This document shows positions 10,635 to 43,205 of a stretch of 43,205 nt of DNA, one piece after another. Every line of letters begins with the position of its first letter. The first letter of the stretch is position 1. The notes under the pieces were generated by a model. That model did no database searches, was not told where the DNA came from, and worked only from the letters and a program-made list of their open reading frames with translations. Both the position numbers and the translations under genes were made by a program. Origin of the DNA: Schmidtea nova (taxonomy: Eukaryota); assembly GCA_044892505.1 (NCBI GenBank), contig CM097883.1, positions 408,352,796 to 408,396,000 of the forward strand, in the 5' to 3' direction.

Positions 10635-11510
10635 ACCACGAAATTACGAAAAAATGAATTAAATTAGGAAAAGAAAGAATTAATTCGAAAAATAAATCAA
10701 AAATTAATCAAAAATTATTAAATATGAAAATGAATAGAACATTTATTAAAAATATAAAAGCCTATAATAATTGGATAATCAAACCAATTAAAAGCACAGA
10801 TCGGTTCTGATTGGCTGATTGAACGCAAAAATTACTATATAAAGGACGCTCAATCAGCTGTTTTATAAAAATAAACAGCACGTTTTAAAATCACTTTTAG
10901 ACACAGTTTTAAGCACTTTTAGCCGTTATAAAATTCAAACAACGAAATTACGAAAAGAAATTAAATTACGAAAAGAAAGAATTAATTCGAAAAATAAATC
11001 AAAAATTAATAAAATATGAAAATGAATAGAACATTTATTAAAAATATAAAAGCCTATAATAATTAGATAATCAAACCAATTAAAAGCACAGATCGGTTCT
11101 GATTGGCTGATTGAACGCAAAAATTACTATATAATGGACGCTCAATCAGCTGTTTTATAAAAATAAACAGCACGTTTTAAAATCACTTTTAGACACAGTT
11201 TTAAGCACTTTTAGCCGTTATAAAATTCAAACAACGAAATTACGAAAAGAAATTAAATTACGAAAAGAAAGAATTAATTCGAAAAATAAATCAAAAATTA
11301 ATAAAATATGAAAATGAATAGAACATTTATTAAAAATATAAAAGCCTATAATAATTGGATAATCAAACCAATTAAAAGCACAGATCGGTTCTGATTGGCT
11401 GATTGAACGCAAAAATTACTATATAAAGGACGCTCAATCAGCTGTTTTATAAAAATAAACAACACGTTTTAAAATCACTTTTAGATACAGTTTTAAGCAC
11501 TTTTAGCCGT
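10635..11510 (+). repeat. About three tandem 292-bp units, each carrying the CCAAT/TATA module (LTR B)
   Basis: Units at 10927-11218 and 11219-11510 plus a diverged upstream copy; CTGATTGGC...TATATAA in each. Confidence 0.9.
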
Positions 11511-11560
11511 TACTATCAATAACCTAATTTCAACCGTTAGCTACCCACTGTGAGAAATTT

Positions 11561-11609
<49 letters not shown>

Positions 11610-13084
11610 CGTTTTCATTTGTGTTCATTCGTGATCTTCATATATAGAATTTTTCTTGAGGTTGCGGACGGCCCACAAGTTCGCCAACTTCACTGCGACT
11701 CGTCCATTAGACTTGCCTTTAGTGTAGAACGAAAGGAGGAATTTTCGGATTTTTCGAGTTAATGATTTATTCCATGGAGGTGTTCGTGGTTTGGTGTTCC
11801 TATGGTGACAGATGTATTGAGAATTTAAATAAACGTGTGAGCTAGAAAATTACAAAAATTAGCTCAATCGTAATAATTTCAGTTAAATCCAAAACCTTTG
11901 AGAAAGGATTAAAATTCCATGTAAATCAGACAGAAGTGAATCTTTGTAAAATAGATAATTCCGAGTTGATAGTAAATGTCGGATAATTTCGTAATTGACA
12001 AAATATTTATTCCCATTAAAATTTTAGCAATGACAAATTTGATTGTTCGTCGGAATTGTAATTAATATTGTTAAATATTGTCATAAGGCCGATGAGCATA
12101 AAAATAAACCAACGAAATTAGCGGAAAATTGATACTAAATGTTATTAAATAAATTAAATTAAATAAACAGCATAATAAAGCTGGAACATTTTATTTGTTA
12201 TATGCATATACGAATCTAAAACAAAAAAATAGTTTGAACAACATTTAATAATAACTAAACGAAAATCAAATACAAATCTAAATAAATTTATAAATGTTTG
12301 TAAAACTTCTCTAAAGCTGTATTCCTTTTTGTCATTGGGATTTCATTTCCATCTAGTTCCTATAACTGTGATAGAGCTAATATCACTAAATGCCGATAAT
12401 TGAAAATTTTTGCGATGGGGTTTTGAAGAAGGCTTAAGCTTCTCAACTTGAAATATATTTTTAATGGATAAATATCTTTAGGATTCTCTATTTTATTAAA
12501 ATCCAAATTTTATATCACCATATTTCGGAGAGAGAGAGAGGCTAGTTGTAGATAAAATCGTTTTGACTCCCCTGCATCTATAATTTCAAGGTTTTTGTTT
12601 TTCTTAATTCTGCTTTTTCTAATTATGATTTTTTCCAGTCATCCAGTTTGTTGATCCCCAAAGATGGTCTGTGGTTTTTTCCTGTAGACGTTGTAAAATT
12701 GTTTGATGTCATCGTATCTAGAACAAATCTTTGTAATAAAATTAATCTATCAAAGATAATTCATAAAGATTATATACTAACTCTGTAAAATGAATACGTT
12801 TAATAATCTGATAATCAAGACTCTTTGGTGTTACTAAATATTTATAATCTAATAATATTTCATCAGTATCTTATTGCTTAAATTTCCTATAATTTATACC
12901 ATTTCAATTTCACCTTTTTTTTCTTTCAATTTTACCTTTTTTTCTTTCAATTTCACTTTTTTTCTTTCAATTTTTTTCTTTCTTTCATTCAATTTTTTTC
13001 TTTCTTTTTCTATTTCTTTCTATTTCAACACATTTCAAATATTTTAAAAATCAAAAAATTGACTATCGAATTTATTGATGATTA

Positions 13085-13620
13085 AGGCAGACCAGCCGCA
13101 CAGTTTGTAATGTTATGAAATACCCTGCAAAATCTGCTGCGGTAACATTCTCTACTTCCGACAAAATAAGTTCGGAAAGTTCATTTGATTCGGCCATTCG
13201 TAACCGAGAAAGTGTTTTCAATTGAACGTGTAACCAAATTCTTCTGTAATTCTTTGAAGTTCGTCTCTTTTATGAACTCTAGCATCGTCAAGAATCAAAC
13301 ATACTTATTCCATATTTAGGTTATTACGTTTTTATAATAGGACCGACTTTCCATTTTTAACAATCAAAAACAAATTATATTTATGATTATTATTAATATA
13401 ATTCTGAAATAAGGTAATAAATAATAAAGGTAGTCAAATTTACTTGGATTACATATTTCTTTCGAATAATATGGTAAATATAATATGAAAGTATTGTCAA
13501 GAATCAAACATACTTCTTCCATATTTAGGTTATTACTTAAATATTGGCACAATTCCAAAAGCATTTATTGTAGAATTTGTGATGTTTTTACAAAAACACA
13601 TCTGATTTATTGACATACTG
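13085..13620 (-). pseudogene. Tc1/IS630-like DDE transposase relic, duplicate copy 1
   Basis: NVFSEYVLELCQYLSNNLNMEEVCLILDN, VCLILDDARVHK and IENTFS fragments match DDE_3-type motifs; internal partial duplication and deletion. Confidence 0.6.
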
Positions 13621-13893
13621 ACATATCTGACCTACCTCTAATTGTTGGTATACTTATATTTGCTCTTGTTCCTTTGCGTAAAGAATAAATGTCAATTTAA
13701 TATTTTAATAAACTTTAAAAATAAGAATAGATAAAAAACCAACAAATTTGAATTCAAAAAGAAGAAAAAAGGGTGAAATAGAAAGAGAAATGGTATATAA
13801 ACATTATTTGCTATCATGTAAATTTTTATAAATTTAAATATAAAATTATAAAATTAAATATTTTCAAATTTCAAATCACTATTAACAAAAACT

Positions 13894-14446
13894 GGATCAG
13901 AATTAGAAGTTTCCCCACAAAATTAACAGAATTAAAAGTTTCCCCCAGGTAATTTAAAATTACAAATTAAATAAATTGAATTATATATTACAGAAAATAT
14001 TATTATTTTAAATTAAACCAAGTTATATATATATATATAGTAAAAAGGGCGACGCTCTAGTGTATGTCGCCCGAAAATTTTAAATAAAAAAATGAATTTT
14101 AAATTATAATGTAAAACTAACAACATATATTTATTCAAAAATAAACTAAATAAGTATTAACAACAGTAACAATCAGATTTATTCACCGATATCGTACTTC
14201 GAAGCAACCAACCGCCTAAATATAATCAAAATATCCTCTTTGTCAACATTTTGTCTTGAAAGCCACAATCGAAAATCCAGAAAATTAATCTTTTGTTCAA
14301 TACTCATTCCTCGCCTTTTCCTCATGTCTACCTTAATGTTTCCCCACCGTCCTTCCATTTTATTGGTATGGACATTGGTTACTGGATCTTTGAACCAGAG
14401 CTTGTGATTAACGGACAAATGTATATAATTTTGATTTTCCAAATTT
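13894..14446 (-). mobile_element. Duplicated left ends of the TIR element and Merlin, with the transposase C-terminus (14179-14446)
   Basis: Identical to 17464-18010; Merlin TIR starts at 14048; truncated at the duplication junction. Confidence 0.85.
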
Positions 14447-14496
14447 AGCACGTTTTAAAATCACTTTTAGACACAGTTTTAAGCACTTTTAGCCGT

Positions 14497-15060
14497 TATA
14501 AAATTCAAACAACGAAATTACGAAAAGAAAGAATTAATTCGAAAAATAAATCAAAAATTAATAAAATATGAAAATGAATAGAACATTTATTAAAAATATA
14601 AAAGCCTATAATAATTGGATAATCAAACCAATTAAAAGCACAGATCGGTTCTGATTGGCTGATTGAACGCAAAAATTACTATATAAAGGACGCTCAATCA
14701 GCTGTTTTATAAAAATAAACAGCACGTTTTAAAATCACTTTTAGACACAGTTTTAAGCACTTTTAGCCGTTATAAAATTCAAACAACGAAATTACGAAAA
14801 GAAAATAAATTACGAAAAGAAAGAATTAATTCGAAAAATAAATCAAAAATTAATAAAATATGAAAATGAATAGAACATTTATTAAAAATATAAAAGCCTA
14901 TAATAATTGGATAATCAAACCAATTAAAAGCACAGATCGGTTCTGATTGGCTGATTGAACGCAAAAATTACTATATAAAGGACGCTCAATCAGCTGTTTT
15001 ATAAAAATAAACAGCACGTTTTAAAATCACTTTTAGATACAGTTTTAAACACTTTTAGCC
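14497..15060 (+). repeat. Second array of 292-bp promoter-bearing units (one shortened, one full)
   Basis: Copies of 10927-11510. Confidence 0.9.
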
Positions 15061-15112
15061 GTCACTATCAATAACCTAATTTCAACCGTTAGCTACCCAC
15101 TGTGAGAAATTT

Positions 15113-15161
<49 letters not shown>

Positions 15162-16635
15162 CGTTTTCATTTGTGTTCATTCGTGATCTTCATATATAGA
15201 ATTTTTCTTGAGGTTGCGGACGGCCCACAAGTTCGCCAACTTCACTGCGACTCGTCCATTAGACTTGCCTTTAGTGTAGAACGAAAGGAGGAATTTTCGG
15301 ATTTTTCGAGTTAATGATTTATTCCATGGAGGTGTTCGTGGTTTGGTGTTCCTATGGTGACAGATGTATTGAGAATTTAAATAAACGTGTGAGCTAGAAA
15401 ATTACAAAAATTAGCTCAATCGTATTAATTTCAGTTAAATCCAAAACCTTTGAGAAAGGATTAAAATTCCATGTAAATCAGACAGAAGTGAATCTTTGTA
15501 AAATAGATAATTCCAAGTTGATAGTAAATGTCGGATATATTCGTAATTGACAAAATATTTATTCCCATTAAAATTTTAGCAATGACAAATTTGATTGTTC
15601 GTCGGAATTGTAATTAATATTGTTAAATATTGTCATAAGGCCGATGAGCATAAAAATAAACCAACGAAATTAGCGGAAAATTGATACTAAATGTTATTAA
15701 ATAAATTAAATTAAATAAACAGCATAATAAAGCTGGAACATTTTATTTGTTATATGCATTAACATATCTCAAACAAAAAAATAGTTTGAACAACATTTAA
15801 TAATAACTAAACGAAAATCAAATACAAATCTAAATAAATTTATAAATGTTTGTAAAACTTCTCTAAAGCTGTATTCCTTTTTGTCATTGGGATTTCATTT
15901 CCATCTAGTTCCTATAACTGTGATAGAGCTAATATCACTAAATGCCGATAATTGAAAATTTTTGCGATGGGGTTTTGAAGAAGGCTTAAGCTTCTCAACT
16001 TGAAATATATTTTTAATGGATAAATATCTTTAGGATTCTCTATTTTATTAAAATCCAAATTTTATATCACCATATTTCGGAGAGAGAGAGAGGCTAGTTG
16101 TAGATAAAATCGTTTTGACTCCCCTGCATCTATAATTTCAAGGTTTTTGTTTTTCTTAATTCTGCTTTTTCTAATTATGATTTTTTCCAGTCATCCAGTT
16201 TGTTGATCCCCAAAGATGGTCTGTGGTTTTTTCCTGTAGACGTTGTAAAATTGTTTGATGTCATCGTATCTAGAACAAATCTTTGTAATAAAATTAATCT
16301 ATCAAAGATAATTCATAAAGATTATATACTAACTCTGTAAAATGAATACGTTTAATAATCTGATAATCAAGACTCTTTGGTGTTACTAAATATTTATAAT
16401 CTAATAATATTTCATCAGTATCTTATTGCTTAAATTTCCTATAATTTATACCATTTCAATTTCACCTTTTTTTCTTTCAATTTTACCTTTTTTTCTTTCA
16501 ATTTCACTTTTTTTCTTTCAATTTTTTTCTTTCTTTCATTCAATTTTTTTCTTTCTTTTTCTATTTCTTTCTATTTCAACACATTTCAAATATTTTAAAA
16601 ATCAAAAAATTGACTATCGAATTTATTGATGATTA

Positions 16636-17190
16636 AGGCAGACCAGCCGCACAGTTTGTAATGTTATGAAATACCCTGCAAAATCTGCTGCGGTAACATT
16701 CTCTACTTCCGACAAAATAAGTTCGGAAAGTTCATTTGATTCGGCCATTCGTAACCGAGAAAGTGTTTTCAATTGAACGTGTAACCAAATTCTTCTGTAA
16801 TTCTTTGAAGTTCGTCTCTTTTATGAACTCTAGCATCGTCAAGAATCAAACATACTTATTCCATATTTAGGTTATTACGTTTTTATAATAGGACCGACTT
16901 TCCATTTTTAACAATCAAAAACAAATTATATTTATGATTATTATTAATATAATTCTGAAATAAGGTAATAAATAATAAAGGTAGTCAAATTTACTTGGAT
17001 TACATATTTCTTTCGAATAATATGGTAAATATAATATGAAAGTATTGTCAAGAATCAAACATACTTCTTCCATATTTAGGTTATTACTTAAATATTGGCA
17101 CAATTCCAAAACATACTCCGAAAATACATTGGCATTTATTGTAGAATTTGTGATGTTTTTACAAAAACACATCTGATTTATTGACATACT
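16636..17190 (-). pseudogene. Tc1/IS630-like DDE transposase relic, duplicate copy 2
   Basis: Paralog of 13085-13620; retains a short segment deleted in copy 1. Confidence 0.6.
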
Positions 17191-17742
17191 GACATATCTG
17201 ACCTACCTCTAATTGTTGGTATACTTATATTTGCTCTTGTTCCTTTGCGTAAAGAATAAATGTCAATTTAATATTTTAATAAACTTTAAAAATAAGAATA
17301 GATAAAAAACCAACAAATTTGAATTCAAAAAGAAGAAAAAAGGGTGAAATAAAATAGAAATGGTATATAAACATTATTTGCTATCATGTAAATTTTTATA
17401 AATTTAAATATAAAATTATAAAATTAAATATTTTCAAATTTCAAATCACTATTAACAAAAACTGGATCAGAATTAGAAGTTTCCCCACAAAATTAACAGA
17501 ATTAAAAGTTTCCCCCAGGTAATTTAAAATTACAAATTAAATAAATTGAATTATATATTACAGAAAATATTATTATTTTAAATTAAACCAAGTTATATAT
17601 AAAGTAAAAAGGGCGACGCTCTAGTGTATGTCGCCCGAAAATTTTAAATAAAAAAATGAATTTTAAATTATAATGTAAAACTAACAACATATATTTATTC
17701 AAAAATAAACTAAATAAGTATTAACAACAGTAACAATCAGAT

Positions 17743-18603
17743 TTATTCACCGATATCGTACTTCGAAGCAACCAACCGCCTAAATATAATCAAAATATCC
17801 TCTTTGTCAACATTTTGTCTTGAAAGCCACAATCGAAAATCCAGAAAATTAATCTTTTGTTCAATACTCATTCCTCGCCTTTTCCTCATGTCCACCTTAA
17901 TGTTTCCCCACCGTCCTTCCATTTTATTGGTATAGACATTGGTTACTGGATCTTTGAACCAGAGCTTGTGATTAACGGACAAATGTATATAATTTTGATT
18001 TTCCAAATTTTCAAGGTTATAAGTTTCCTTCCAATAAGCGGGCCACCTATCACTGTAAATAATGCTGTTCGGCTTAACAAATTTCTCAATTAAAGCAATT
18101 AGTGTTTCTCGGCTTCGCTCAAGCACAATTTGTCCAAACCATTTTTTGGTACCTCGTTCGGTTCCTCCAAATAGCCATATTTCAGGATAGCGTCTTCCGC
18201 GATAATATTTCCATTTTTTTGAAATCAAAGTTTCGTCAATTTCTACTATTACGCCATTAGGACCGTCCGACATTTCAAGTAAAGATTCCGAGCACACCTC
18301 ATACAAGAAATTATTCCAATCAGAAATTGTTTGGTTAGCCATGCCAATCATAGACTGTATCCTGTTTGTGGGAATATCTCGCAGTCAAAAATACGTGAAT
18401 AATACCAGTTTTTTGAGTGGCATTCTGCTTTTTTCAAAAAAAACTGTCTTTGCGAATAGAAACTTGACTGCATTTCCTCGGACATTGAAAAACAAAACCG
18501 TCACTAGTTTGTGCCCTCTTTATCAAGGACATGTTACTTCCACAGCGACAAATTTTTGTCGTTGCAATTAGGTGGTGCGTTTGAAGATAGCGAATTATAC
18601 GTT
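17743..18603 (-). pseudogene. Merlin transposase with one frameshift and one stop upstream of the 202-aa open part
   Basis: VEIDETLISKKWKYYRGR, WLFGGTER, IYSDRWPAY, VNHKLWFKDP, TNKMEGRW; N-terminal CRCGSNM...FQCPRKC..SIRKDSFF/EKSRMPL. Confidence 0.9.
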
Positions 18604-18664: not shown

Positions 18665-19640
18665 TTACTGTGTCACAACTCCAGGATTCTTGCTGTCTTT
18701 TGCTTTGGCAAACCTGTAAGCTGCTATTAATAAACTAAAAAAATGTTCATGGTTTTGATTTGCATGAGCTATTTTGATATGTCTGTTAAAATGATTTTTT
18801 CTTGAAAAACTGTTGTGGCAAATATGACACTGAAATCTTTGTTGCTTTTCATGCACTGTTTTTGTATGTGAAAGCAGATTATTTCTTTTTCCAAATGTGA
18901 TTTTGCAGATTGAACATTCAAATGTCTTTTGTTTTTCATGCACTATTTTTGTGTGTGAAAGAAGATTACTTCTCTTTCCAAATGTTTTTTTGCAGACTTG
19001 ACATTCAAATGTCTTTTGTTTTTCATGTACTGACTTTATGTGTGAAAGAAGATTGTCTTTTCTTCCAAATTTTTGGTTACAGATTGAACACTCAACAGGT
19101 TTTTGTTCTTTGTGAATTGCTTTGGTGTGGTTTAGAATACGTTTTTCTCTTTCCAAGCCTGTATTGCTACTTTTACGTTTCAAAATTTGGTTATGATCTT
19201 TTATCTGCTGATCACTGTAATTTGTAGAATCCTGAAAACAAATAGAAGTTTAATTTTTTTTTAATAAGTACAAAGTGAAACGTGCAATATAGGCATCTAA
19301 AAAATACAACTAAAAAGAGAGTCAATTTGGTCCTGGTAATTTGAATTAGACTTTTTGATATTTTCAACTCTTTTTAATAAAAACTATAAAGACTTTCAAA
19401 TCATTTTTTTAATTGTTTATCCATTAAAGGTTTTCTAAATCATCAGCGTTAAAGTTTTTTTGTCACTTTCGTTGAGTTAAAACTATTAAGAACTTTTTTA
19501 CAATATTTTGCACTAACTTTTTCTAGCTTTTTACGAATTTTATTTGTTAGAAACTTTTCAACAAAACCAAACAAAACACTTGGTCACATAAATTTTTTAA
19601 AACATACAAACAAACAACTAAAATTTAAAAATCTTACCAT
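18665..19640 (-). CDS. C2H2 zinc-finger gene (four full fingers plus a half finger), probably two exons
   Basis: Four CxxC-x12-HxxxxH repeats with HEKQKTFEC linkers. ATG at 19640-19638 is followed by GTAAG; acceptor TTTTCAG at 19232; exon 2 from 19231 is in frame (M|DSTNYSDQQ...). Confidence 0.75.
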
Positions 19641-24430: not shown

Positions 24431-24904
24431 TATCAAGAAATTATCGTATTGTTTGTCCTTATGAAGATTTTTCTCTACTTGCACAGATCTCTCCCCGAGT
24501 CGACCTCTGAAGCTGGAGTTACTCTTGCAATCATGTTTTCTCTTAATCTACAATAAAAATATCATCTATTCAACCTTTAAATTTATCCCTGGAATCATTC
24601 GAAGCTCTTATGAATTTTATTTGATAAAATTTTCATATTTATGGATCAAAAATTAAAAAAACATAAATCATTAACTATTCCCTCTAAAGTTCGTAAGTCC
24701 GCATTACATTTATATTCTCCAACCGCATAGGGTGAATCTATTAACAATTTCCCTTCTCCATAAATTGAATTGCCGCGCTTTAATCTTTGATCCCCGTTGT
24801 TGGTGTGGGAATGTCTAATGCAGTCGCAGTGATTGATATATACGATAATCGATTTCCATTAGCGACATATTTCTATTCAATGGGATTTCGCTTGGTGTTA
24901 ATTA

Positions 24905-27010
24905 TCTTGGTGTGCTGGCTGATGTTAGTCAACTTGGGATTTTATTGATGTTCGTATTAGGGTAATGCCGCCAACATAAAAATGTCTTTTTTTACATAAA
25001 AGTGTCCTTGCAATGCCTCTTTCATGGCCATCGGACTAAACTAGGTCCACTGTAACTCCTCAATACCTAGACCTTGCTTATTAATCTTACCCTCCAAAAG
25101 TTAGATTCGACGTTGTAGTTGTCACTTTCTGTCGGTATCTACTATTTGTTTAAGTCCTTCCATCTAAAAGAATAATTATAAAACATACATTTTATTGGCT
25201 AAATGGGATCATCCTATCCTTGTTCCTTTACAATTCAGGTCTAGTTTTCGCTATATTTATGATTCAATATTGATCCTGAAGTACTCTCTTCCCTTTACAC
25301 CACTCGTCGACATCGTCTCTAATATCTTCCTTATCGATTATTTGTCAAGCATGCCGCAATCATACGTTTTCAACCATGCAGATCACCATCCGTACGTATT
25401 CTTCATGTTACCTCAAGCATCCAAAATCCTCACAGATACTTCATTCATACAAAAAGTAAATAGAAGTCATAGCCCCAATTGTATTCAGTAATACTTAAAA
25501 ACAAACGAACAACAAAATGCAATGCTACGAGCGATTATTGGTTAGTTACACGTTGATTTAAATCCCACCCGTTAACTCTCGGGATCTGATAAGGTCCCTT
25601 CCTGGGAAGCGGTGGCTTCTTACTTGAGAACTCCGTTTGCTCGATAAAGCTCCGGATTCAGAGTCCAACAGACCCTCGAATTATATAGGAAAATCTCATA
25701 GACTTGAATATTTTGGGCCCACTGAGAGGAGTATCGCCAATCTGTTGAAAATGCGAAAGGAAGGTTTGAGAACTCCTGTGGCTCTTCGGTGTCTAGTCTT
25801 CTGGGACGATCTAGAAGAACATATCCTATTCGATGTAAGTCGCGTGTCGGAATGCGATCACCCAGCGGGGTGTCATTTCGTTATCGCGAAGAATGATAAA
25901 CCATTTGCGATGTTGATGTTTGAAATTTATCGATGGTCAGAGTGGTCCACCTTCGAACCATTTTTCCTCTGAGGGTTTTTCCCATAATTTGAAGGGTGCC
26001 TTGACAATGAATTGGCTACGCCATCGCCATCGCCGTGCTTGTCGGTGTGGATCGTTAAGCACACCTGCCGGGGCCTGTTTGGGAGGCCAGATTCCGTATT
26101 TGTTGACCTTTCCGTTTCAGCAATAGAGATGTTGACGATTTCGCATTATCTTAGAGATAGATTGCTTGCTGTCGAGAATGGGGGTTCGGTTTGTAGAGAG
26201 ATCGTTTGACGTGTAGGTCTTCTGATGCGTGAATTTGGTAATGTCTTCTGGCTACTCTACTATAAAAATGGCCAATATCCCTTATGACTATGTCTCCTTA
26301 CTTAATCGTGATTGAATCAGTCGATGAGTGGTACTGAATACATTATTCCATAACTTTATTGCGTCATTGATGTGATTTACTACTTCGTACTGCTAGGTAC
26401 TGCAAGGTGAGCGAATGAGTTACACCAGCGATCGGTTAACTTTTTTAACCATTACCCCAAAATATTTTTGCGTAAGTCGATATTATCCCCCCACCCATTC
26501 TGAAAAGAAAACAATCAATGTAAATTTTAAATAAACATTATTTATTAAATTAATTTACATTTACATATTTATAAAAAAAGTTACATGAAATAGCAATTTA
26601 AATATTAGAAAAATTTCCCTATTACCCAAAAATTTTTCATTTTTACCCCACTTGGGGTAATTTACCCCGGTTCCCCGACCGCTGAGTTACATTGTCGTGA
26701 AAGTCATATTTCAATCATTGGTAGGTTACGAACTATTTGTATTCACTCTATTTTCACAAATTCTACCAATTTCCTCTTTGGGTGACAACTTTCTATCTCT
26801 TATTGTCGACTCTCATATACTCTCAATTGTTTTTTCTTCCTTTTTATCTTCTGGGAGCTGATTCGTTTCCTTTTCTTAATTATAGTTTTCGGTTCAACCG
26901 ATGTCTCGCCTGAGTCTTCTTTCTGAATGGTGGTAGGGTACCATTTGGATAGAGTCATGGGCCGGATTAGTTCTGGTAGGTAATCAGCCACGAACTACTG
27001 GGTGATGTAA
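24905..27010 (-). mobile_element. Truncated LTR-family unit E
   Basis: Terminus TCTTGGTGTGCTGG...CAACTTGGG matches the A terminus; GATGTTCGTATTAGGGTAATGCCGCCAACATAAAAATG matches D; carries a coiled-coil ORF fragment; promoter end missing. Confidence 0.6.
26426..26684. mobile_element. hAT-type MITE, 259 bp
   Basis: TIR CAGCG(A/G)TCGG; 8-bp TSD AGTTACAC/AGTTACAT; TTACCCC subterminal repeats. Confidence 0.75.
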
Positions 27011-28131: not shown

Positions 28132-29184
28132 TGAAGTAGTGTCATTTTACTGACTTAAAGACATATGGAAATTGTACCTGTATCAACGAGAATTTGTGAA
28201 AATAAAGGTATGTTCATGATCATTTAGTTGTGTTGTTATACGTCCCGAAGGTCTCCGGACCCGACGGGTGACAATGGGTCTCTCGTAGCAACACCTTATG
28301 GGTGATGGCCGATGCGGCGGAGGAGCACCAATAAATGTGGGAGAGGTTGCGCATAGGATTGTCCGAAGTAGTGTCGTGAACACTAGTAGAGATATCCCTC
28401 CAATTTCAGAAACATTTCTTTTTCAATGAACATAACAGCTCGATTTATCATCAAGGGAAAGGGAATTTAACAATGCCACTCGCATTCATAGGAATCACTA
28501 CATGCAGAAATTTTTACCCAAGTGCAATATGGGAGCGACAATAGAGATCCGCACCAAAATACCCCGACATGAGGTGGAAGGAATGTCAGGGGAAATGTTT
28601 GATATGATACAGTTGATGGTGTTTGGTTGATGTACTGATTGATGGTGTGATACATGAATTGAACGCGCCAACTACCGTAGGAAATCAGAGGAGGTAGGGC
28701 GAATGCATGAGGCTTGAAATGTTTTCGGTCGACGGCACCACTGGATGAAAGGCTGCTTGTCGACGGATTGGAGTATACATAAGAGTAATTTGACGTATAA
28801 AAAGGCAGATCTGACCGCTGAGTGCTGAAGTTTGTTGAAAATATCTAGTGAGTGAACAACAATTGTAGTTGAATGCAGACCGAGATCAGTGCATAATAAG
28901 TCACGGTTGAGCGTAGGCTACCACACAATACAGAACCATGGCTGAATGGTTACAGTGATAATTTTCTGAATTACTGTAGGAATGAGTGCTGTTGTGATTG
29001 AAAGAATGAGGATGCGTGGAAAGGGACAATGAGAAATGAATGTTGTATGGAATTTTCTAAATAAGGAATGATGTGATGAAGGGAAATTAAAAGACTATAT
29101 GACGGGATCGAAAGAATAAGTGGTGTGGGGTATATAAACTTAGCGAAATATCTTGAGCGTATAGAATTGCGACCGGAACAAATC

Positions 29185-29340
29185 CACACAGGTCTTCTAT
29201 CGGCAGTGGTGAACCCGTAAATTTTACCTGCCGTTAGACTACAACGCTAGATGCATTACTAACATGATGAGCAATTAGGGACGAGTCATGGGCATCAGCG
29301 GGAGAATGTTAATGTGGGTGGGATTGCCCTAATATTAACA
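29185..29340 (+). ncRNA. Conserved structured RNA element, copy C
   Basis: CTTCTATCGGCAG...CTGCC; CATGAT/GTCATG stem (29263-68 with 29285-90), 16-nt loop with ATTAGGG complementary to CCCTAAT at 29327. Confidence 0.65.
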
Positions 29341-30042
29341 TCAAGAAATATCCATGTTAAACATCAACCAACAAATCAGCATGGTGGTTTTGTGTAATAA
29401 CAAATGAAATAAATTTTATTGAATTGAAAATTTGAAAATGTATAGTTGACATTGTCATCGCAGAGACACCCAATCTTCGTTCTTCAGATATTGTAATGAC
29501 TTTTCTACCCAATCCGGATCGACTCTTTCTTGCTTGATTGTCATGTTGACTTTTGTATTTTAAAATGTCATGCTTCGTAGAAATCATAGTATTTGTAATG
29601 TTACTATAAAATAATATATATGTCTATCAATTTACTTTTATTTTATTTAATATCATGTTTATAATAATATTAATTTTTTGAATTAAAATTTATACATCAG
29701 ACACAAACATTTATTTAAACCAATTTTGAAAACGAAATTTTTATGTTTTATAATTTTAAATTTATAAAGTTATTTTAAATTTATAAAACGGAAATTAATT
29801 GGAAATTAGTATTTACAATATTTTAAAATGAAAAATTGTAAATAAAAACGCCTCTGATTGTATGGGGCAATTAACTCATTACATGCAAATTTATCCCAAA
29901 TGAACCTTTACAATTAAATCGGTTAATCTATGCGCAAAATGGACAGGAACCGGAACTCAGATAATTTCCATCCAATTGAATTACAGTTATGTTTAAGATA
30001 TAGACATAATCTGTTTCATTAATTTTCTTATTACAATTGATA

Positions 30043-34180: not shown

Positions 34181-34311
34181 CATTAACAAATAACAAACAG
34201 ATAATGAACAACTTTTATAATAACTTTATTTAACAAAAAAAATACAATTAATGTCTACTCACGATAAAAAAAATCAAATGTTTTGAATAATCTTCTGTTT
34301 ATTCTATAATA

Positions 34312-34974
34312 TAGGGTTTCCCTTTCGTTAGGGACAATTTCCCTACCAAAAGTAACAGTTTTCCTATCAATATGATAATTTTCCCTATCAATAGTAACAT
34401 TTTCCCTATTAATAAGGACTTCCGTAAATTAAAATTATGAAATTTAAGATACCAATCCTTGATTTATTGATATGTAAAGAAAGGGATGGGTATACACCAT
34501 AAAAGTGTATATGGTATAAAAGTGCATATGTAGCATCATTACCGAGGATTGGATGAATTAATTCAAAGAGATAATATTAATTTGTTTTTCTTGCCACCAT
34601 ATTCACCGATGTTAAATATTATCGAAAATTGTTTTTCAAATTGGAAAAATAATGTTGCAAGGTCTGAGGTTACATCTGAGGTGGAGTTATTTCGCCAAAT
34701 AAACACTGTATTTCAAACAATAACAACCGAGGATTGTAATGGATTTTTTTAAGAAAAATGCTGAGGTATTTCGAACGCTGTAGAAATCGTGAAATATTTA
34801 TTGAATAAAATCATATATGATAATCTCATTTTTATTCTTTACTTTATGTATTTCATTTTATTTGTTACTTTTATATTTTTTAATTATTTCCATAATGATA
34901 GGGAAAATGTCCGATTTGATAGGGAAATTGTTACTTTTGGTAAGGAAATTGTCCCTAACGAAAGGGAAACCCTA
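34312..34974 (+). mobile_element. Tc1/IS630-like internal-deletion derivative, 663 bp
   Basis: TIR of about 50-60 bp starting TAGGGTTTCCCTTTCGTTAGGGACAATTTCC, TA flanks, transposase remnant inside. Confidence 0.85.
34549..34790 (+). pseudogene. DDE_3 transposase C-terminal fragment
   Basis: FLPPYSPMLNIIENCFSNWK is the Tc1/IS630 YSPDLNPIE motif. Confidence 0.85.
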
Positions 34975-36554
34975 TAATTGCTTCATCGATTTTTTTAAAA
35001 ATTTTATTATTATTCATACTACAATGATATAACAGATGTAATTTTAATGATTTGTGTGGTTTATTTTCCGCTGTAGTTAATTTATATTTTTGTGTTTGCC
35101 ATTATAATATGAATTCAAATTCTAAATTTGAATTTGGCTTGCTATAGTAAATTACAAAGAATACAAAAAACCAATCTACAAATTAACAAATGAAAAGTCT
35201 ATTGAAGGAAGCTAAATTATTTAAGAAGACACTCAATATAAATTAAATATCAGAAACTTCGAATTATCAACCAAAAGAAACCAAATTGTCGAAAAGAAAG
35301 TAATCTAATCAAAGAAGTGGAAAACCCATTTATCATAAGTATTTTTTTGAAAATCCTAAAACGTAATAATGCGTGAGTGTTATTATTATAAATAAATTTT
35401 ATCATTTCTCATTGTAATTTTTTATTCAATTATAAAATTATACACTCATTCATACAAGCACGCATACTTAACCCACATTATAGAAATAACATTCACCCTA
35501 GCAGTCCAGGCACACTTTTACAGGAGACTCGCTAGGCTCTACATTTTCTCAATACACTGTCAATAAACTAACATATAATAAATATCGACACAATTACAAC
35601 AATCGTAACGATAATCAAGACAGATAATAACAGTCATATATTAAAAGATAATAAAAGATACACACACAATAAAAGGGGATTCACAAAAAGGGGAACCTGA
35701 ATTCAAAAATTTTACGAACACTATCGACAAAACAAAACAGAATTATCTCATTAGTACACTACAATAATGTTAAAAGTTGAAAATAGCATTCATTACCTAA
35801 AAATGACAGTCAGATTTACACGTGGAAATGTTTCGTCGCTACTGTTTACCGCCTGGGAGGATTTCTTGTGACAGATCGAAAGTCACATGTTTTTTTCTGT
35901 TTTAAATAATCGAAATCGGAAAAAATACAAACAACCAGCACATTTTACTGAAATGTTTTTTATTCAAACATAAAATTCCTGATTTTTTCAAACATTTAAT
36001 TTACAAAAAAATTTTGAACCCTATCAAAATTTTTTTTTATTATTTATAAATAAGTTTTCCTTGTTATTATTGACAGTAACTAGTTTTTTAATTCATTTAA
36101 ATTTATAATTTTTCTATATAATAATCTATTGATAACATAAAAAGGATGACATTAATTAGTAATTAAATTATTAACCAAAAATATCATATAATATGATAAT
36201 CTGAAAAAAATGCAAACTACCTTCATGTTTTACTGAAATGGTAAATCAAACCTTTTTTCTAAAAAAAAATTAACAAAATGTAATTTAGAATAATTATAAT
36301 TTAGTTTGCCTAACTATCTTTTGATAACAGATAATTCGTTTAAAACCATTGAGTTATGTTACAACAATCGGTTCCATTTAAAGATCTATTATCCATAAAT
36401 ATAGAGTGATCACTTTTAAATAGTCATGTATATTCTGAAATAAATAACACATTTATTGAATTACGCAATATACAGTGAACTGCTTCACCTTTGGTCTTTG
36501 GTCTCTAATGTTGGCGGTCTGGATTGGGTTAAAACAAAAATAGTAAATTAAACA

Positions 36555-36755
36555 AAACGCTCTAGGGATTCCTCCATCCAAAACCTTAACATAAAATGCT
36601 TACATATCACACGAGCACCCTCGATCATTTCCCTGTAATAATCGAGTTGGAAATGTGCAAGGTGTTTGAACAATGATGGGCAGGTGAGCTCTATTGCTAA
36701 AACTACTCCCCATTTATGTTCACGGGTTCGTCTCGCTGCCGATAGAAGGACTTAC
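36555..36755 (-). ncRNA. Conserved structured RNA element, copy F
   Basis: Minus strand CTTCTATCGGCAG...CTCACCTGCC; CTCGAT/ATCGAG stem with 15-nt loop whose AGGGA complements downstream TCCCT. Confidence 0.65.
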
Positions 36756-37074
36756 GCTTTAACTTTAATCTATCCGCATCCATTGTCTCTCATTTCAATT
36801 ATTTCTTTTCGGCCCCCTGTCTTTATAATAATTCAATTTTTCTTTCAGCGCCCTTCTTTACAATATCAACAAATAATCTTTAGTCAATTTCAATATATTA
36901 TCTCTTTAATGTTTCTATTGTTTATTAGATTTATGTTAATCCTATTGTTAATTCTAATTTATGTTTAATTTATTTGAAATTTTTAATAAATTACTTTATC
37001 TCATATACGTTACAATAAAATAAATACAAAACAAAAATTATTTAATAAGCGAAAATAACTAAATCACAGAATTT

Positions 37075-37668
37075 CTATTCAAAGTATTTGGTAATGTCTT
37101 CATCCGATATTGCAAAGTTCATTGTTAGATCAATCTCGGGAATCTCTTTTGACTGTTGTGCCAATTGCTGAAGAACTTGTTTCTTCCAGCGACGCTGGCG
37201 CGCTCCCATCTTGCTCTTCTTCTTCCTTTTACCTTCTGGATTTGTCGTGTTCTTTGGTGTACTTGCTGCTATTGTTATTGCGCGAACCTGAGATGGTTCC
37301 TCGGTGTTCGTTCCTTTTGTGCATCCTGCTTTCTCGTCAGCCCAATGCTGATAAGTGATTGGTCGAATGAGCTGGCTGAGCTCTTGAGTTAAATACGACG
37401 CCGTTACAGATTTTAGACATTTCTTTAGTTCCATCTTCGTCGCGTCCAATTCCATTTTGATCTCCTCGTTTACTCGCTGTGAGCGTTGATTTTTTATAAT
37501 TTGTGTTTTCATCTGCTCTGGACTGAACCAGCTTTTCTTCAGGTTTGAGATTATGCCATCGGCTTCTTTTATTTTTTCAGATTTCCGTAACATTTCTTTT
37601 TCCAGGCTTCGAATTATCCTCCATGCTTTATCCAATTCGGCTTGATTAGTTGCTGTGTTGGCTGACAT
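37075..37668 (-). CDS. Uncharacterised 197-aa coiled-coil protein with Lys/Arg-rich tail, encoded inside the LTR
   Basis: Intact ATG-to-stop frame preceded by an acceptor-like TTTTAG; homologous to three decayed copies in this window. Confidence 0.75.
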   Translation of the reverse strand: MSANTATNQAELDKAWRIIRSLEKEMLRKSEKIKEADGIISNLKKSWFSPEQMKTQIIKNQRSQRVNEEIKMELDATKMELKKCLKSVTASYLTQELSQLIRPITYQHWADEKAGCTKGTNTEEPSQVRAITIAASTPKNTTNPEGKRKKKSKMGARQRRWKKQVLQQLAQQSKEIPEIDLTMNFAISDEDITKYFE

Positions 37669-39950: not shown

Positions 39951-40694
39951 TATGTTATCGTTTCATTAAAAAGTGATTTATGATTATTCTGATCGATAAA
40001 CTGAAACGCTTCCAACTTGATATCAGACGAATCTTTTAATTAAAATGAGTTCGAAATTGTTAATTGACAGAAATAAATAAAACTCGATTGAATCTTAGTA
40101 GGATAACAAAAAAAATTACCATTGTAAATCTTAGACTTTAATGGATTATTTTTGCAACATGTTTATATTTTATGATATGGATTCCAATAATGTTACTCGA
40201 TATAGAATGTATTTGTGTTGATATTGTACTTTTAAATAGTTCATATTTTTTTAAATTTTCTAGAAATTAGGCTTCATCCAATTTACTGATAATCAAAATT
40301 TATTTAGTGTAGCTACTGAAAAATTAATATAAATACATTGAAAAATTCATTTTTTATGAAATTTTGGAAATTTTTCATGCTCTAAAAGCTTTATAAATTT
40401 AATGATTCGAGAAGCATGGAAATAAGGCGCTGATCTACTGGAATATTCAAAAATGATTAAGATAGACCATAATCTACTAAATCCACTTTCATTTTCATTT
40501 TCCATCCTTTGGTAATCTTCATTTGAGTCATTTTTTAAATCGATATATGTTGAATCATCCAGTTTTTCATCGTCATCTATCAAATAATATACTTAGTCAT
40601 ATGAAAAGTTATCTAAATCAAAATCATCGGTTAAAAGTTATCCGTTAGATATGCTGGTTCGTTGGTTTGGTCTTAAAACTAAGGTTATTACTGA

Positions 40695-40885
40695 TGTTAG
40701 TATTAGGGCAACCTCACCAACATAAAAATATTCCCCTCGCTGATACCTGTGACTAGTCCCTAATTATTCGTCATGTTGGTACTGTATCTAGCGTTGTAGA
40801 ATGATGAGGCAGGTGAGCAACCTTGTGGCTACTATTCTCTCATTTATCTACGGGTCCACCACTACCGATAGAAGGTCTATGTGGA
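40695..40885 (-). ncRNA. Conserved structured RNA element, copy D
   Basis: Minus strand CTTCTATCGGTAG...CTCACCTGCC; TGAC/GTCA stem with 16-nt loop, ATTAGGG complementary to CCCTAAT. Confidence 0.65.
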
Positions 40886-41069
40886 TTTGTTTCAGTCCCT
40901 ATTTCCTTCATTCACTAGTCAATTTACATCTAGGGTTCTAGTTAATTATTCGCCTTCGGCCTTCCGGAAAAAAGAATTGTGTGAATCTCATGTCCTTTAC
41001 TTAAACATTCATTTCATCATCCATAACTCATCAAATGATTAAACAGACACAAGACATTTCGGCATTTTA

Positions 41070-41628
41070 TTAGGCTAACAACACCTTTGGATTAATTACA
41101 TTTAATAATTGTCGTTCTGACAGCCCGCTCAACAAGTCTACTTCGATGCCCATTCGCTTGGCATAAGCGCGTCTTTCTCGTCGGCGTTTTGCTCCTAACC
41201 TGTTTCTCTTTTTCGTCTTGGCGTTTGCTACTGTCGTTCCGGTTTGAATATCATTATTCATGAACAAGCTGTTTGTCTGATTTTCGGTTTGGGTCTCAAT
41301 ATTTACACTCCGCGACGTAACCCATCTGTCGAATGTGGCCGCCCGGATCTGATCTTTCAGGTATTCTGAGATAAAGTTGGCCGAAACTGTCTTGAGACAG
41401 CGATTCAATTCTACTCGGTAGCCGCCAGTTCAATTGATTTTTCGTTGAGGGCGCGCTGAGTACGATCCTTTCCTTTTAAGATCTCCTTAAAGGCGGCGGG
41501 CAAAACCAGCTCCGTCGGAATTTCTCTAAATCTACACTTTGCCTATTTACCGTTCCTTCCAGGAGACGGATACGTCGACGCATTTGTTCAATCTCCTCGT
41601 CCGCTATTGATTTAGGTAGGGGCTCCAT
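41070..41628 (-). pseudogene. Coiled-coil/basic-tail LTR ORF, copy D (two frameshifts)
   Basis: MEPLPKS...RRIRLLEG...RRSWFCP/AAFKEILKGKDRTQRALNEKSIELAAT/RVELNRCLKTVS...IRAATFDRW...KKRNRLGAKRRRERR; aligns to F KKSWFSPEQMK...SQRVNEEIKMELDATKMELKKCLK. Confidence 0.8.
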
Positions 41629-42583
41629 TTCCTAGAATGGAAACATGCTCATGTTATTATTTTAACGGTTAAAATGATTGATCGTCACTCTCATGTAAAT
41701 GCGTTGAATCCACAGCGAAACCCAAATTTATCTCATCTTTCACCCAATACTTGTCATCAATATACTCTCACATGCATCCCTCCCTCACAGACTCGTTTGG
41801 CATACTTAATCACTCCGAGTTACTACCTTTCGTATTTCAACTCATTCAGACGCAACATACAAATTACAACAATTTCCGAGAGACAATCAATTTATTTAAT
41901 AATTTTTTGATCTACACTGATCATAGCATTTTCATCGGGCTTTCCCGGGAACGCCTGAGGCTCCAATTCTGATCGTATTCGCTATCGCTCCGTTGAATAC
42001 CGTTTGCGTACTAGAGGTCTGGGTTTGGGTCCCAACACAATTGTCACTTGTATAGAAAGACCTCTTTCCATTCGACACCTGCTGCCCAAATTGAACTTTT
42101 CTCGCTCGAGGCCGGTGCTCCGGTTGGTAGATTGGTATATGGGGTCAGTTCTCTGGTGACCAGATTCCGTGGTCGCTCCAAAATTATGTATCCCAAACGG
42201 TGGATTTCGGTCACTGCTATTGGCTGAAAATGGATTAACCATCAGGGTTTTTCAGAAGGTTCCTGCATTTCGATGAACCTATTCAATTTACCCGAAGGGG
42301 GTTGGCGGGTTTCTAGCGGCCAATGGGAGTCACCTTCCCGTGGCAGCTTGATTCTTCATGACGTTTCGCTGGAAAAGAATCACGATATATCGTGCGTTCT
42401 ACGCCAATGGCGCAAATGCCTCTTTAAGTCGTCCTGGAGTCGTGTTGGCGCGTGGTTTAACGCTAGGATAATTAAAAATGAACGAGCGGGGTCATCCTTC
42501 CACTTCGCGTCTTTACATAGGTTAAAATTCAAGTACTAAGATTTATAATAATTTAGTTACTATAAATTTCATTCCAAATAGAA

Positions 42584-43205
42584 ATGTACAAGTTAGAAAA
42601 TCATGATTTGAGACTTCTTTATTTATTTAAGTGGAAATCGAAGAACAATTCAGTTGAGGCGGAGGGAATATTAATAATGCTTTTGGGAGCAATACAGAAT
42701 GAAAGAACTATTAAGTTGGTTTTAGAAATTTGATGACGGCGAAATTATATCGAAAATATGCCTCGTTGTAGACCCAATATCAAGCTGTCGGAGGAAGATT
42801 TTCGTGAAGCTGTTGCTTAAAGATCAACAAGGTCTGTTCGAGAAATTGCTATAGATCTGTCTGCCTCCTAAACAACCGTTCATGGCAATCAAGTTAATTG
42901 GAATGGTCAAAATGCTTCAAAAATGGATCTCACATGAATTGACTGAGTTGCAGAAATTAAACAGATTCCAAACTTGCTTATCCCTTCAAGCACGACATCG
43001 AAAGTCATCTTTTCTTAATAATATAATTACCTGCGATGAAAAATGGATTCGTAAGCGGTTAGGAGAACGGTTGGATAAACATCAATTCCCAAATCAGTTT
43101 CCAAAACCGGAACTTCGCCAAAAGAAAGGCCTTTAAGTGAAATCGAAGAAATGGAAGTTCAATGATTCGGAGGAAATAAAATTGACAGTTATCACTTTCT
43201 TGGAC
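42584..43205 (+). pseudogene. Mariner (DD34D-type) transposase relic running off the window
   Basis: N-terminal HTH region (LRLLYLFKWK...NINNAFG), RSVREIA, KWISHELTE.QK.NR...C, IITCDEKWI; multiple stops and frameshifts. Confidence 0.88.

What the first reader, a model, noticed from the sequence alone, without database searches (positions are those of the whole stretch)
36555..36650. Covarying H-type pseudoknot next to the LTR terminus in four divergent copies
Seen: stem 1 differs in sequence but stays paired (A GTGAT/GTCAC, C CATGAT/GTCATG, D TGAC/GTCA, F CTCGAT/ATCGAG). The loop is 16, 16, 16 and 15 nt and holds (T)AGGG, which pairs with downstream CCCT(A) (F: AGGGA/TCCCT). A conserved GG(T/C)A(T/C)(C/T)AGCG (F GGTGCTCGTG) follows stem 1. 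G-U pairs occur on the ORF-sense strand, indicating RNA-level selection. Other copies: 10241-10315, 29263-29333, 40701-40773; partial at 24950-24985. It did not fit hammerhead, HDV, twister or pistol cores by eye, although the loop-GGG/CCCUA topology recalls pistol/twister. Inference: candidate new ribozyme, exonuclease-resistant RNA, or packaging/priming element.
Basis: partly seen in the sequence, partly recalled or inferred. Interest (0 to 1): 0.85.

Follow-up and report, generated by a model that had tools for sequence, protein, structure and literature searches.

The report
Conserved folded RNA in repeat tail
Four very divergent copies of an unknown, decayed repeat share a non-coding end that keeps the same two-part RNA fold through compensating base changes, so the fold is real and probably a recognition tag for copying the repeat, but the proposed pseudoknot, ribozyme role and LTR setting are not shown.

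Summary
The "conserved GGYAYYAGCG" is the 3' strand of those helices. A second structured domain lies about 60 nt upstream. Over 28 nested pairs in 4 copies, 95% of cells pair and 12 pairs carry changes on both sides; no shuffle reached this (0/500), and slid controls pair at 30-37%.

The pseudoknot (loop AGGG with downstream CCCU) is complementary in all four copies. Its core never varies, and it is no stronger than pairing with shuffled sequence, so it is unproven.

G-U pairs in the upstream hairpin favour the ORF-sense strand.

No Rfam family matches, even at E<=10.

The "LTR" label is unsupported: no paired repeat and no RT, integrase or protease motif or Pfam match in the pieces I scanned. 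Every copy of the block lies 3' of an orphan coiled-coil/arginine-rich ORF or is 5'-truncated.

Best reading: a cis-acting 3'-terminal RNA recognition structure of a retroposon-like repeat. This is a new member of a known kind, of modest interest.

The parts
36480..36794 (-). Copy F: conserved 3'-terminal non-coding block (contains the finding)
   Evidence: nhmmer profile of the four copies; alignments
36610..36664 (-). Copy F domain II: three-part hairpin P1a/P1b/P2.
36564..36568 (-). Copy F: UCCCU, the proposed pseudoknot partner of loop AGGGA (36630-36634)
36679..36740 (-). Copy F domain I: 5-bp closing helix, a 3-bp helix and a 6-bp apical hairpin with a 4-nt loop (36688-36703)
37075..37668 (-). 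Copy F: intact 197-aa orphan ORF (N-terminal coiled-coil-like part, arginine/lysine-rich C-terminal part), 3' of which the block lies
   Evidence: no Pfam, word-index or profile homologues
40623..40913 (-). Copy D block: domain I 40808-40866, domain II 40738-40793, CCCUAA 40703-40708
41073..41631 (-). Copy D: homologue of the coiled-coil/Arg-rich ORF, broken (at least 2 frameshifts)
42047..42355 (-). Copy D: further upstream orphan coding remnant shared with copy E, broken at least once
10120..10395 (+). Copy A block: domain I 10167-10226, domain II 10222-10277 (the linker is deleted, so the two domains abut), CCCUA 10309-10313
9535..10029 (+). Copy A: homologue of the ORF, broken (at least 4 breaks: 2 stops and 2 frameshifts by a parsimony count)
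29156..29407 (+). Copy C: block only, with no homologous ORF upstream (5'-truncated or solo). Domain I is shortened (29202-29232, apical hairpin deleted); domain II is 29245-29300; CCCUAA is 29327-29332
24897..24984 (-). Copy E: 3' part of the block only. One internal deletion removed domain I, the hairpin and most of the ORF
25014..25880 (-). Copy E: remnants of the upstream coding region and of the coiled-coil part of the ORF
26803..26994 (-). Sixth, weak remnant of the Arg-rich ORF with no recognisable block after it

Best explanation
The finding is part of a roughly 250-290-nt non-coding block that ends a repeated, now decayed, retroposon-like unit. On the ORF-sense transcript the block folds into two domains. 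Domain I is a closing helix plus a small hairpin with a 4-nt loop. Domain II is a three-part hairpin (P1a 3 bp, P1b 5 bp, an 8-nt/1-nt internal loop, P2 6 bp) that presents a 15-16-nt loop with an invariant AGGG. The stems drifted in sequence between lineages but stayed paired. The single-stranded motifs stayed fixed: CUUCUAUCGG before domain I, loop AGGG, UUUAUGUU and CCCUA downstream. I infer that this is the tag by which the element's own copying or RNA-binding machinery recognises the 3' end of its transcript. The helices would give the shape and the invariant unpaired bases the specificity, as in stringent-type LINE 3' tails. Loop AGGG may also pair with CCCU to compact the fold, but that is optional in this model. 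Shown: the helices, their covariation, the 3'-terminal position and the absence of any known family. Inferred: RNA rather than DNA as the structured molecule, the recognition function, and the non-LTR-like nature of the element.
For: Slid partners pair at 30-37%. The hairpin alone gives 92.7% paired and 7 double-changed pairs, 0/500. Column-shuffle z-scores are -2.8 to -3.7 on the sense strand. Each copy folded alone gives the same three-part hairpin. Strand: five G-U cells in the domain-I hairpin, one in its closing helix and three in P2 fit only the sense strand; two cells fit only the antisense strand. Position: homology among copies stops shortly after the block. Four of five blocks lie 3' of homologous ORFs on the same strand. 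Copy C holds only the last 250 nt, as 5'-truncated retroposon copies do. The ends carry short ACCAA(C/G)-type repeats at varying spacing. Precedent: stringent LINE proteins bind a cognate 3' stem-loop, with general recognition of the stem and specific recognition of the loop (PMC4176376); R2 protein binds structured 3' UTR RNA (PMC11194090).
Against: No reverse transcriptase, endonuclease, integrase or protease was found. The motif scan of all pieces of 40 aa or more and the Pfam scans of about 38 selected pieces were empty. The retroelement nature is therefore inferred from layout only. There are only four full copies, and several double changes come from the single most divergent copy, F. 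Single-copy folding z-scores are modest, -0.9 to -1.7. The antisense strand folds at least as well by energy, z -4.4 to -4.5. No clear target-site duplication flanks copy C. There is no poly(A) or clean microsatellite tail. The last ORF before the block is not an RT, unlike classical LINEs.
Confidence: 0.45

Rival explanations
1. The block is (part of) a short LTR of an LTR retrotransposon, and the fold is a U3/R/U5 structure used for packaging, dimerisation or primer activation.
For: In copy D, a purine-rich tract precedes a TG and the conserved part ends in CA. In copy C, TGG follows the CA end. Copy C could be a solo LTR. Structured, pseudoknotted terminal domains are known in Ty1 RNA (PMC5454406, PMC3681743).
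Against: None of the five blocks has a partner repeat in the window, although 6-18 kb upstream of copies A, E and F could be searched. No block is followed by sequence conserved in other copies. No RT, integrase or protease signal was found. Similarity between C and D runs about 9 nt upstream of the putative TG (pair I3). No target-site duplication was found at TG/CA bounds.
Confidence: 0.2
2. The fold, with the AGGG:CCCU pseudoknot, is a new self-cleaving ribozyme or an exonuclease-resistant RNA.
For: The hairpin-loop-to-downstream-strand topology is sterically possible: 6-8 nt before the pairing strand within the loop, 4-5 nt after it, and 36-51 nt between stem 1 and the CCCU strand. Both partner motifs survive even in the divergent copy F. 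Ribozymes are known in retroposons, for example twister variants at the 5' ends of Perere-3 (PMC8501958).
Against: No hit to any ribozyme or xrRNA family at E<=10 in any of the four blocks. The pseudoknot has no compensatory change; copy F loses two of its pairs without compensation. Its energy is within the shuffle range. Known retroposon ribozymes sit at the 5' end of units, not the 3' end.
Confidence: 0.06
3. The inverted repeats act in DNA, not RNA: as a protein-binding palindrome or a single-stranded DNA hairpin of a DNA transposon, a rolling-circle element or an integrated DNA virus.
For: The helices are mostly Watson-Crick, and the antisense strand scores as well or better. No retroelement enzyme was found.
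Against: Nine G-U cells fit only one strand against two for the other. The helices are interrupted by asymmetric internal loops. There are no terminal inverted repeats. The hairpin lies about 100-130 nt from the end of the unit.
Confidence: 0.1
4. The copies are endogenised fragments of an RNA virus or viroid-like agent, captured repeatedly, and the block is its 3'-terminal replication structure.
For: The ORFs are orphans. A roughly 200-aa coiled-coil plus arginine-rich protein and a unit of about 1.7 kb loosely recall small RNA agents. The divergent copies are clustered in both orientations in a region full of decayed repeats.
Against: The D and F units are not rod-like: folding z +0.7 and -0.1, with 7% long-range pairs. 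No protein homologue was found among 1.84 billion representatives. There are no HDV-like ribozyme hits.
Confidence: 0.08
5. Chance: the four sequences are related, and the apparent pairing is a by-product of shared ancestry.
For: There are only four sequences, and shuffle controls ignore phylogeny.
Against: Slid-partner controls, which keep relatedness, drop from 95% to 30-37% paired and from 12 to 0-3 double-changed pairs. About seven independent compensatory events fall on different branches.
Confidence: 0.04

Closest known systems
3' tail stem-loop of stringent-type LINEs (UnaL2, ZfL2-1/2; PMC4176376)
   Same: A hairpin with upper and lower stems near the 3' end of the unit, followed by short repeats. 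Stem shape is tolerated while the loop sequence is specific. 5'-truncated copies keep it.
   Different: Here there are two structured domains spread over about 200 nt and a much larger loop. The hairpin lies 100-130 nt from the end. No RT ORF is seen upstream. The last ORF is a small coiled-coil/Arg-rich protein.
R2 retrotransposon 3' UTR RNA (Rfam R2 element family; PMC11194090)
   Same: A multi-helix 3' UTR fold with a proposed pseudoknot, bound by the element's protein to start copying.
   Different: No Rfam match at any threshold tried. There is no rDNA target context and no R2-type ORF.
Ty1 5'-terminal cis-acting domain with a pseudoknot (PMC5454406, PMC3681743)
   Same: [quoted passage not shown]
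   Different: The Ty1 domain is 5'-terminal and tied to a primer-binding site. Here the block is 3' of the ORFs, and no LTR pair or primer-binding site is shown.
Pistol and twister self-cleaving ribozymes (Rfam; twister variants in Perere-3, PMC8501958)
   Same: A hairpin loop that could pair with a downstream strand, in a repeat-element setting.
   Different: No covariance-model hit at E<=10. The pseudoknot is unsupported. The position is 3' rather than 5' of the unit.

Membership tests
H-type pseudoknot | Stem 1: a hairpin stem maintained across homologues | tested here: met
   22 of 24 cells paired. Two pairs have changes on both sides and two have one-sided changes.
H-type pseudoknot | Stem 2: loop bases pair with a strand 3' of stem 1, supported by covariation or an energetic excess | tested here: inconclusive
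   5-7 complementary bases are present in all four copies, and this is always the best loop-to-downstream duplex. The core is invariant, there is no double change, and the energy is within the shuffle range.
LTR of an LTR retrotransposon | Two direct copies flanking an internal region | tested here: not met
   blastn, nhmmer and a covariance model find each block once per unit and no partner.
LTR of an LTR retrotransposon | gag/pol domains (protease, RT, RNase H, integrase) in the internal region | tested here: not met
   Motif scan of all pieces of 40 aa or more and Pfam scans of about 38 selected pieces found none. The copies may be truncated.
LTR of an LTR retrotransposon | TG...CA termini, a polypurine tract before the 3' copy, a primer-binding site after the 5' copy, and target-site duplication | tested here: inconclusive
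   TG/CA and a purine-rich tract are plausible in D only. TGG follows the end in C. No target-site duplication was found. No tRNA was available for comparison.
Stringent-type LINE 3' tail | A conserved stem-loop in the 3'-terminal non-coding region | tested here: met
Stringent-type LINE 3' tail | 5'-truncated copies sharing a common 3' end | tested here: met
   Copy C holds 250 nt only. A, F, D and E extend different distances upstream. All copies stop shortly after the block.
Stringent-type LINE 3' tail | An endonuclease/RT ORF upstream of the tail | tested here: not met
   Only orphan ORFs lie within the 1.7 kb of shared upstream sequence.
Stringent-type LINE 3' tail | A terminal short tandem repeat or poly(A), and target-site duplications | tested here: inconclusive
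   ACCAA(C/G)-like units occur once or twice per copy near the end, but there is no clean array. A 6-nt flank match in C is not significant.
Known self-cleaving ribozymes, xrRNAs and retroelement RNA families in Rfam 15 | A covariance-model match | tested here: not met
   No match at gathering score in the window. Nothing relevant at E<=10 in the four blocks.
Deltavirus-like agent | A rod-like, self-complementary genome of about 1.7 kb with HDV-type ribozymes | tested here: not met
   Folding z +0.7 and -0.1. No HDV-family hits.

The most novel reading that the evidence does not exclude
The two-domain fold with the AGGG:CCCU tertiary contact is a new class of catalytic or nuclease-blocking RNA that processes or protects the 3' end of an unknown retroposon or virus-derived transcript.
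Probability: 0.06. Interest if true: 0.8.

Novelty: new member of a known kind. Interest (0 to 1): 0.36.

Why it matters
If the reading holds, this is an uncatalogued cis-acting RNA structure, absent from Rfam, that marks the 3' end of an orphan repeat family with no detectable protein relatives. It would give a handle for finding and classifying that family in its genome. It would also be a further example of stems that drift while loop and linker motifs stay fixed, as in 3' tail recognition. It does not open a new question by itself, because structured terminal RNAs are expected in mobile elements.

Tried and rejected
- More copies: a metagenome scan with a 27-position pattern that three of the five window copies match gave two hits, both unrelated on reading. 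The covariance model with filters off and nhmmer found no further copies in the window. I did not scan the viral contig collection (see referred steps).
- Protein relatives: the word-index searches and the exhaustive profile search found nothing for the element's ORFs. Exact look-up of the intact ORF found nothing.
- Source organism: homologues of a neighbouring transposase lie only on short metagenome contigs, so the organism stays unknown.
- Alternative genetic code: no long ORFs emerge under any alternative set of stop codons.
- Deltavirus-like rod: rejected.
- tRNA-like or primer-binding reading of the TGGTGAACCCGT stretch: no tRNA was found by ARAGORN. The motif keeps TGG in only two copies and lies inside the block, 3' of the ORFs, so I dropped it.
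- Alternative nested fold that uses AGGG...CCCU and drops stem 1: it appears in the single-sequence folds of copies A and C only, not in the consensus.
- Pairing of the internal loop with the conserved UUAUGUUGG: strong in copy D only.
- Block remnant after the sixth ORF fragment: none found.
- Palindromic kissing-loop motif in the apical loop: present in copies C and D only, by eye.

Full report
**What the window is.**
The window is AT-rich, eukaryote-like DNA. It holds C2H2 zinc fingers, a mariner fragment and an IS1595/Merlin-type transposase. It has one N gap, no tRNA gene and no Rfam match at gathering score. Reading frames are short and decayed, and changing the genetic code does not restore them.

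**The observation.**
- The stem 1 strands, the loop lengths (16, 16, 16, 15 nt), the loop AGGG and the downstream CCCT are as described.
- The partial copy E keeps only the 3' half, because of an internal deletion.
- The copies are 60-77% identical over the block and cannot be aligned outside the shared unit.

RNAalifold on the four copies returns stem 1 (here P2) enclosed by a 5-bp helix, P1b. In C, D and F it is further enclosed by a 3-bp helix, P1a; copy A keeps two of those three pairs.
- The "conserved GGYAYYAGCG" after stem 1 is the 3' strand of P1b and P1a.
- An 8-nt/1-nt internal loop separates P1b from P2.
- About 60 nt upstream lies a second domain: a 5-bp closing helix just after the invariant CTTCTATCGG, a 3-bp helix, and a 6-bp hairpin with a 4-nt loop. 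That hairpin is deleted in copy C.

**Statistics.**

| Test | Hairpin alone (14 pairs) | Both domains (28 pairs, 102 cells) |
|---|---|---|
| Cells paired | 92.7% | 95.1% (shuffles 83.7%) |
| Pairs changed on both sides | 7 | 12 |
| Shuffles reaching the observed values | 0/500 | 0/500 |

- With the 3' partners slid by 1-3 columns, which keeps relatedness, pairing falls to 30-37% and double-changed pairs to 0-3.
- Column-shuffled alignments give z = -2.8 to -3.4 for the hairpin region and -3.7 for the block on the sense strand.
- Each copy folded alone reproduces the three-part hairpin, but with modest z-scores of -0.9 to -1.7.
- With four sequences this is good evidence, not final proof. Several double changes come from copy F alone. 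Others separate A from C and D, so roughly seven independent compensatory events are implied.

**Strand.**
By energy the antisense strand folds as well or better, z = -4.4 to -4.5. The sense strand has 52 of 56 cells paired and the antisense 51 of 56, and D's two mismatches become G-U on the other strand. The apical hairpin of domain I does discriminate: five G-U cells there would be A-C mismatches on the antisense strand. Overall about nine cells fit only the sense strand and two only the antisense strand. I take the ORF-sense RNA as the likely structured molecule, with moderate confidence.

**Pseudoknot.**
In all four copies the best duplex between the apical loop and the next 110 nt is AGGG with CCCU: 5 bp in A and F, 7 bp in C and D. 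Shuffled downstream sequence does as well in 12-57% of trials.
- The 4-bp core never varies.
- Copy F loses two flanking pairs without compensation and gains one through a one-sided change.
- The geometry is feasible. The joint survival of both motifs in the divergent copy F suggests that each is constrained.
- Their pairing is not demonstrated.

**Known families.**
No Rfam 15 family matches at gathering score. None relevant matches at E<=10 with permissive filters on any of the four blocks, on either strand. This covers hammerhead, HDV-like, twister, pistol, hatchet, xrRNA and R2 models.

**Context.**
In A, D, F and E the block is preceded on the same strand by homologous orphan coding sequence.
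- The main ORF is about 200 aa, with a coiled-coil-like N-terminal part and an arginine/lysine-rich C-terminal part.
- It is intact only in F. It is broken at least twice in D and at least four times in A, and is mostly deleted in E.
- D and E share a further upstream remnant.
- These proteins have no Pfam match, no word-index relatives and no relative among 1.84 billion representatives.
- Copy C has the block alone.
- Homology among copies stops shortly after the block, where short ACCAA(C/G)-type units recur.
- No block has a partner repeat, none is followed by conserved sequence, and no RT, integrase or protease motif or Pfam match was found in the pieces I scanned.

The "LTR terminus" is therefore not supported. 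The layout is that of a 3'-terminal untranslated region shared by copies truncated to different extents at the 5' side. That layout is typical of non-LTR retroposons. The absence of an RT leaves the class open.

**Mechanism.**
The pattern is drifting but paired stems with fixed unpaired motifs: CUUCUAUCGG, loop AGGG, UUUAUGUU and CCCUA. This matches RNA tags read by a cognate protein. For stringent LINEs, the protein recognises the stem generally and the loop specifically (PMC4176376). R2 protein likewise binds structured 3' UTR RNA (PMC11194090). I therefore rate a template-recognition or packaging tag as the best explanation (0.45). Below it come an LTR-borne structure (0.2), a DNA-level hairpin (0.1), a captured RNA-agent terminus (0.08), a ribozyme or xrRNA (0.06) and chance (0.04).

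- All inference rests on four copies from one window. The metagenome scan found only chance matches.
- In my reasoning I briefly recalled from memory short consensus motifs (a primer-binding-site consensus and RNA polymerase III box consensus) for comparison by eye. I stopped, sent none to any tool and base nothing on them.
- Scripts printed the bounds of stop-to-stop pieces used as search references. This implicitly shows where frames end.

Noticed in passing
window 10877-18010: Two tandem copies of a 3.55-kb unit, 98% identical. Each starts with 292-bp tandem repeats. The second copy ends with an IS1595/Merlin-type DDE transposase ORF (17743-18351, -), of which the first copy keeps only part. 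It lies directly after copy A's block and may have been inserted there.
   Followed up: partly
window 7736-8766: A 512-bp tandem duplication, 99% identical, upstream of copy A.
   Followed up: no
window 18665-19183 (-): An ORF with four C2H2 zinc fingers next to the transposase. It contains internal repeats.
   Followed up: no
window 42855-43133 (+): A mariner-type transposase fragment upstream of copy D. It may interrupt that copy at its 5' side.
   Followed up: no
window 5265-5699 (-): A 144-aa ORF that looks gag-like by eye but has no Pfam match. It is not linked to the block.
   Followed up: partly
window 1892-2203 and 2642-2911 (-): Two adjacent paralogous orphan coding pieces, 54% identical over 90 aa, within a roughly 700-bp direct repeat.
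   Followed up: no
window 3700-4090: A low-complexity array with a 30-nt period that is open in several frames (GYCP-type repeats).
   Followed up: no
window 34310-34393 / 34893-34976: An 84-nt inverted repeat, 88% complementary, with arms 499 nt apart. The layout is MITE-like. It lies next to a long (TA)n tract.
   Followed up: no
window 40709-40783 (-): In copy D only, the internal loop plus the start of P2 can form 11 bp with the conserved UUAUGUUGG stretch (-13.6 kcal/mol). This is a possible alternative conformer. It is not conserved in A, C or F.
   Followed up: yes
loops at 29275-29280, 40758-40763; partners 29327-29332, 40703-40708, 24955-24960: The loop motif and its partner read TTAGGG and CCCTAA, one unit of the common telomere repeat and its complement. 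This may be coincidence.
   Followed up: no
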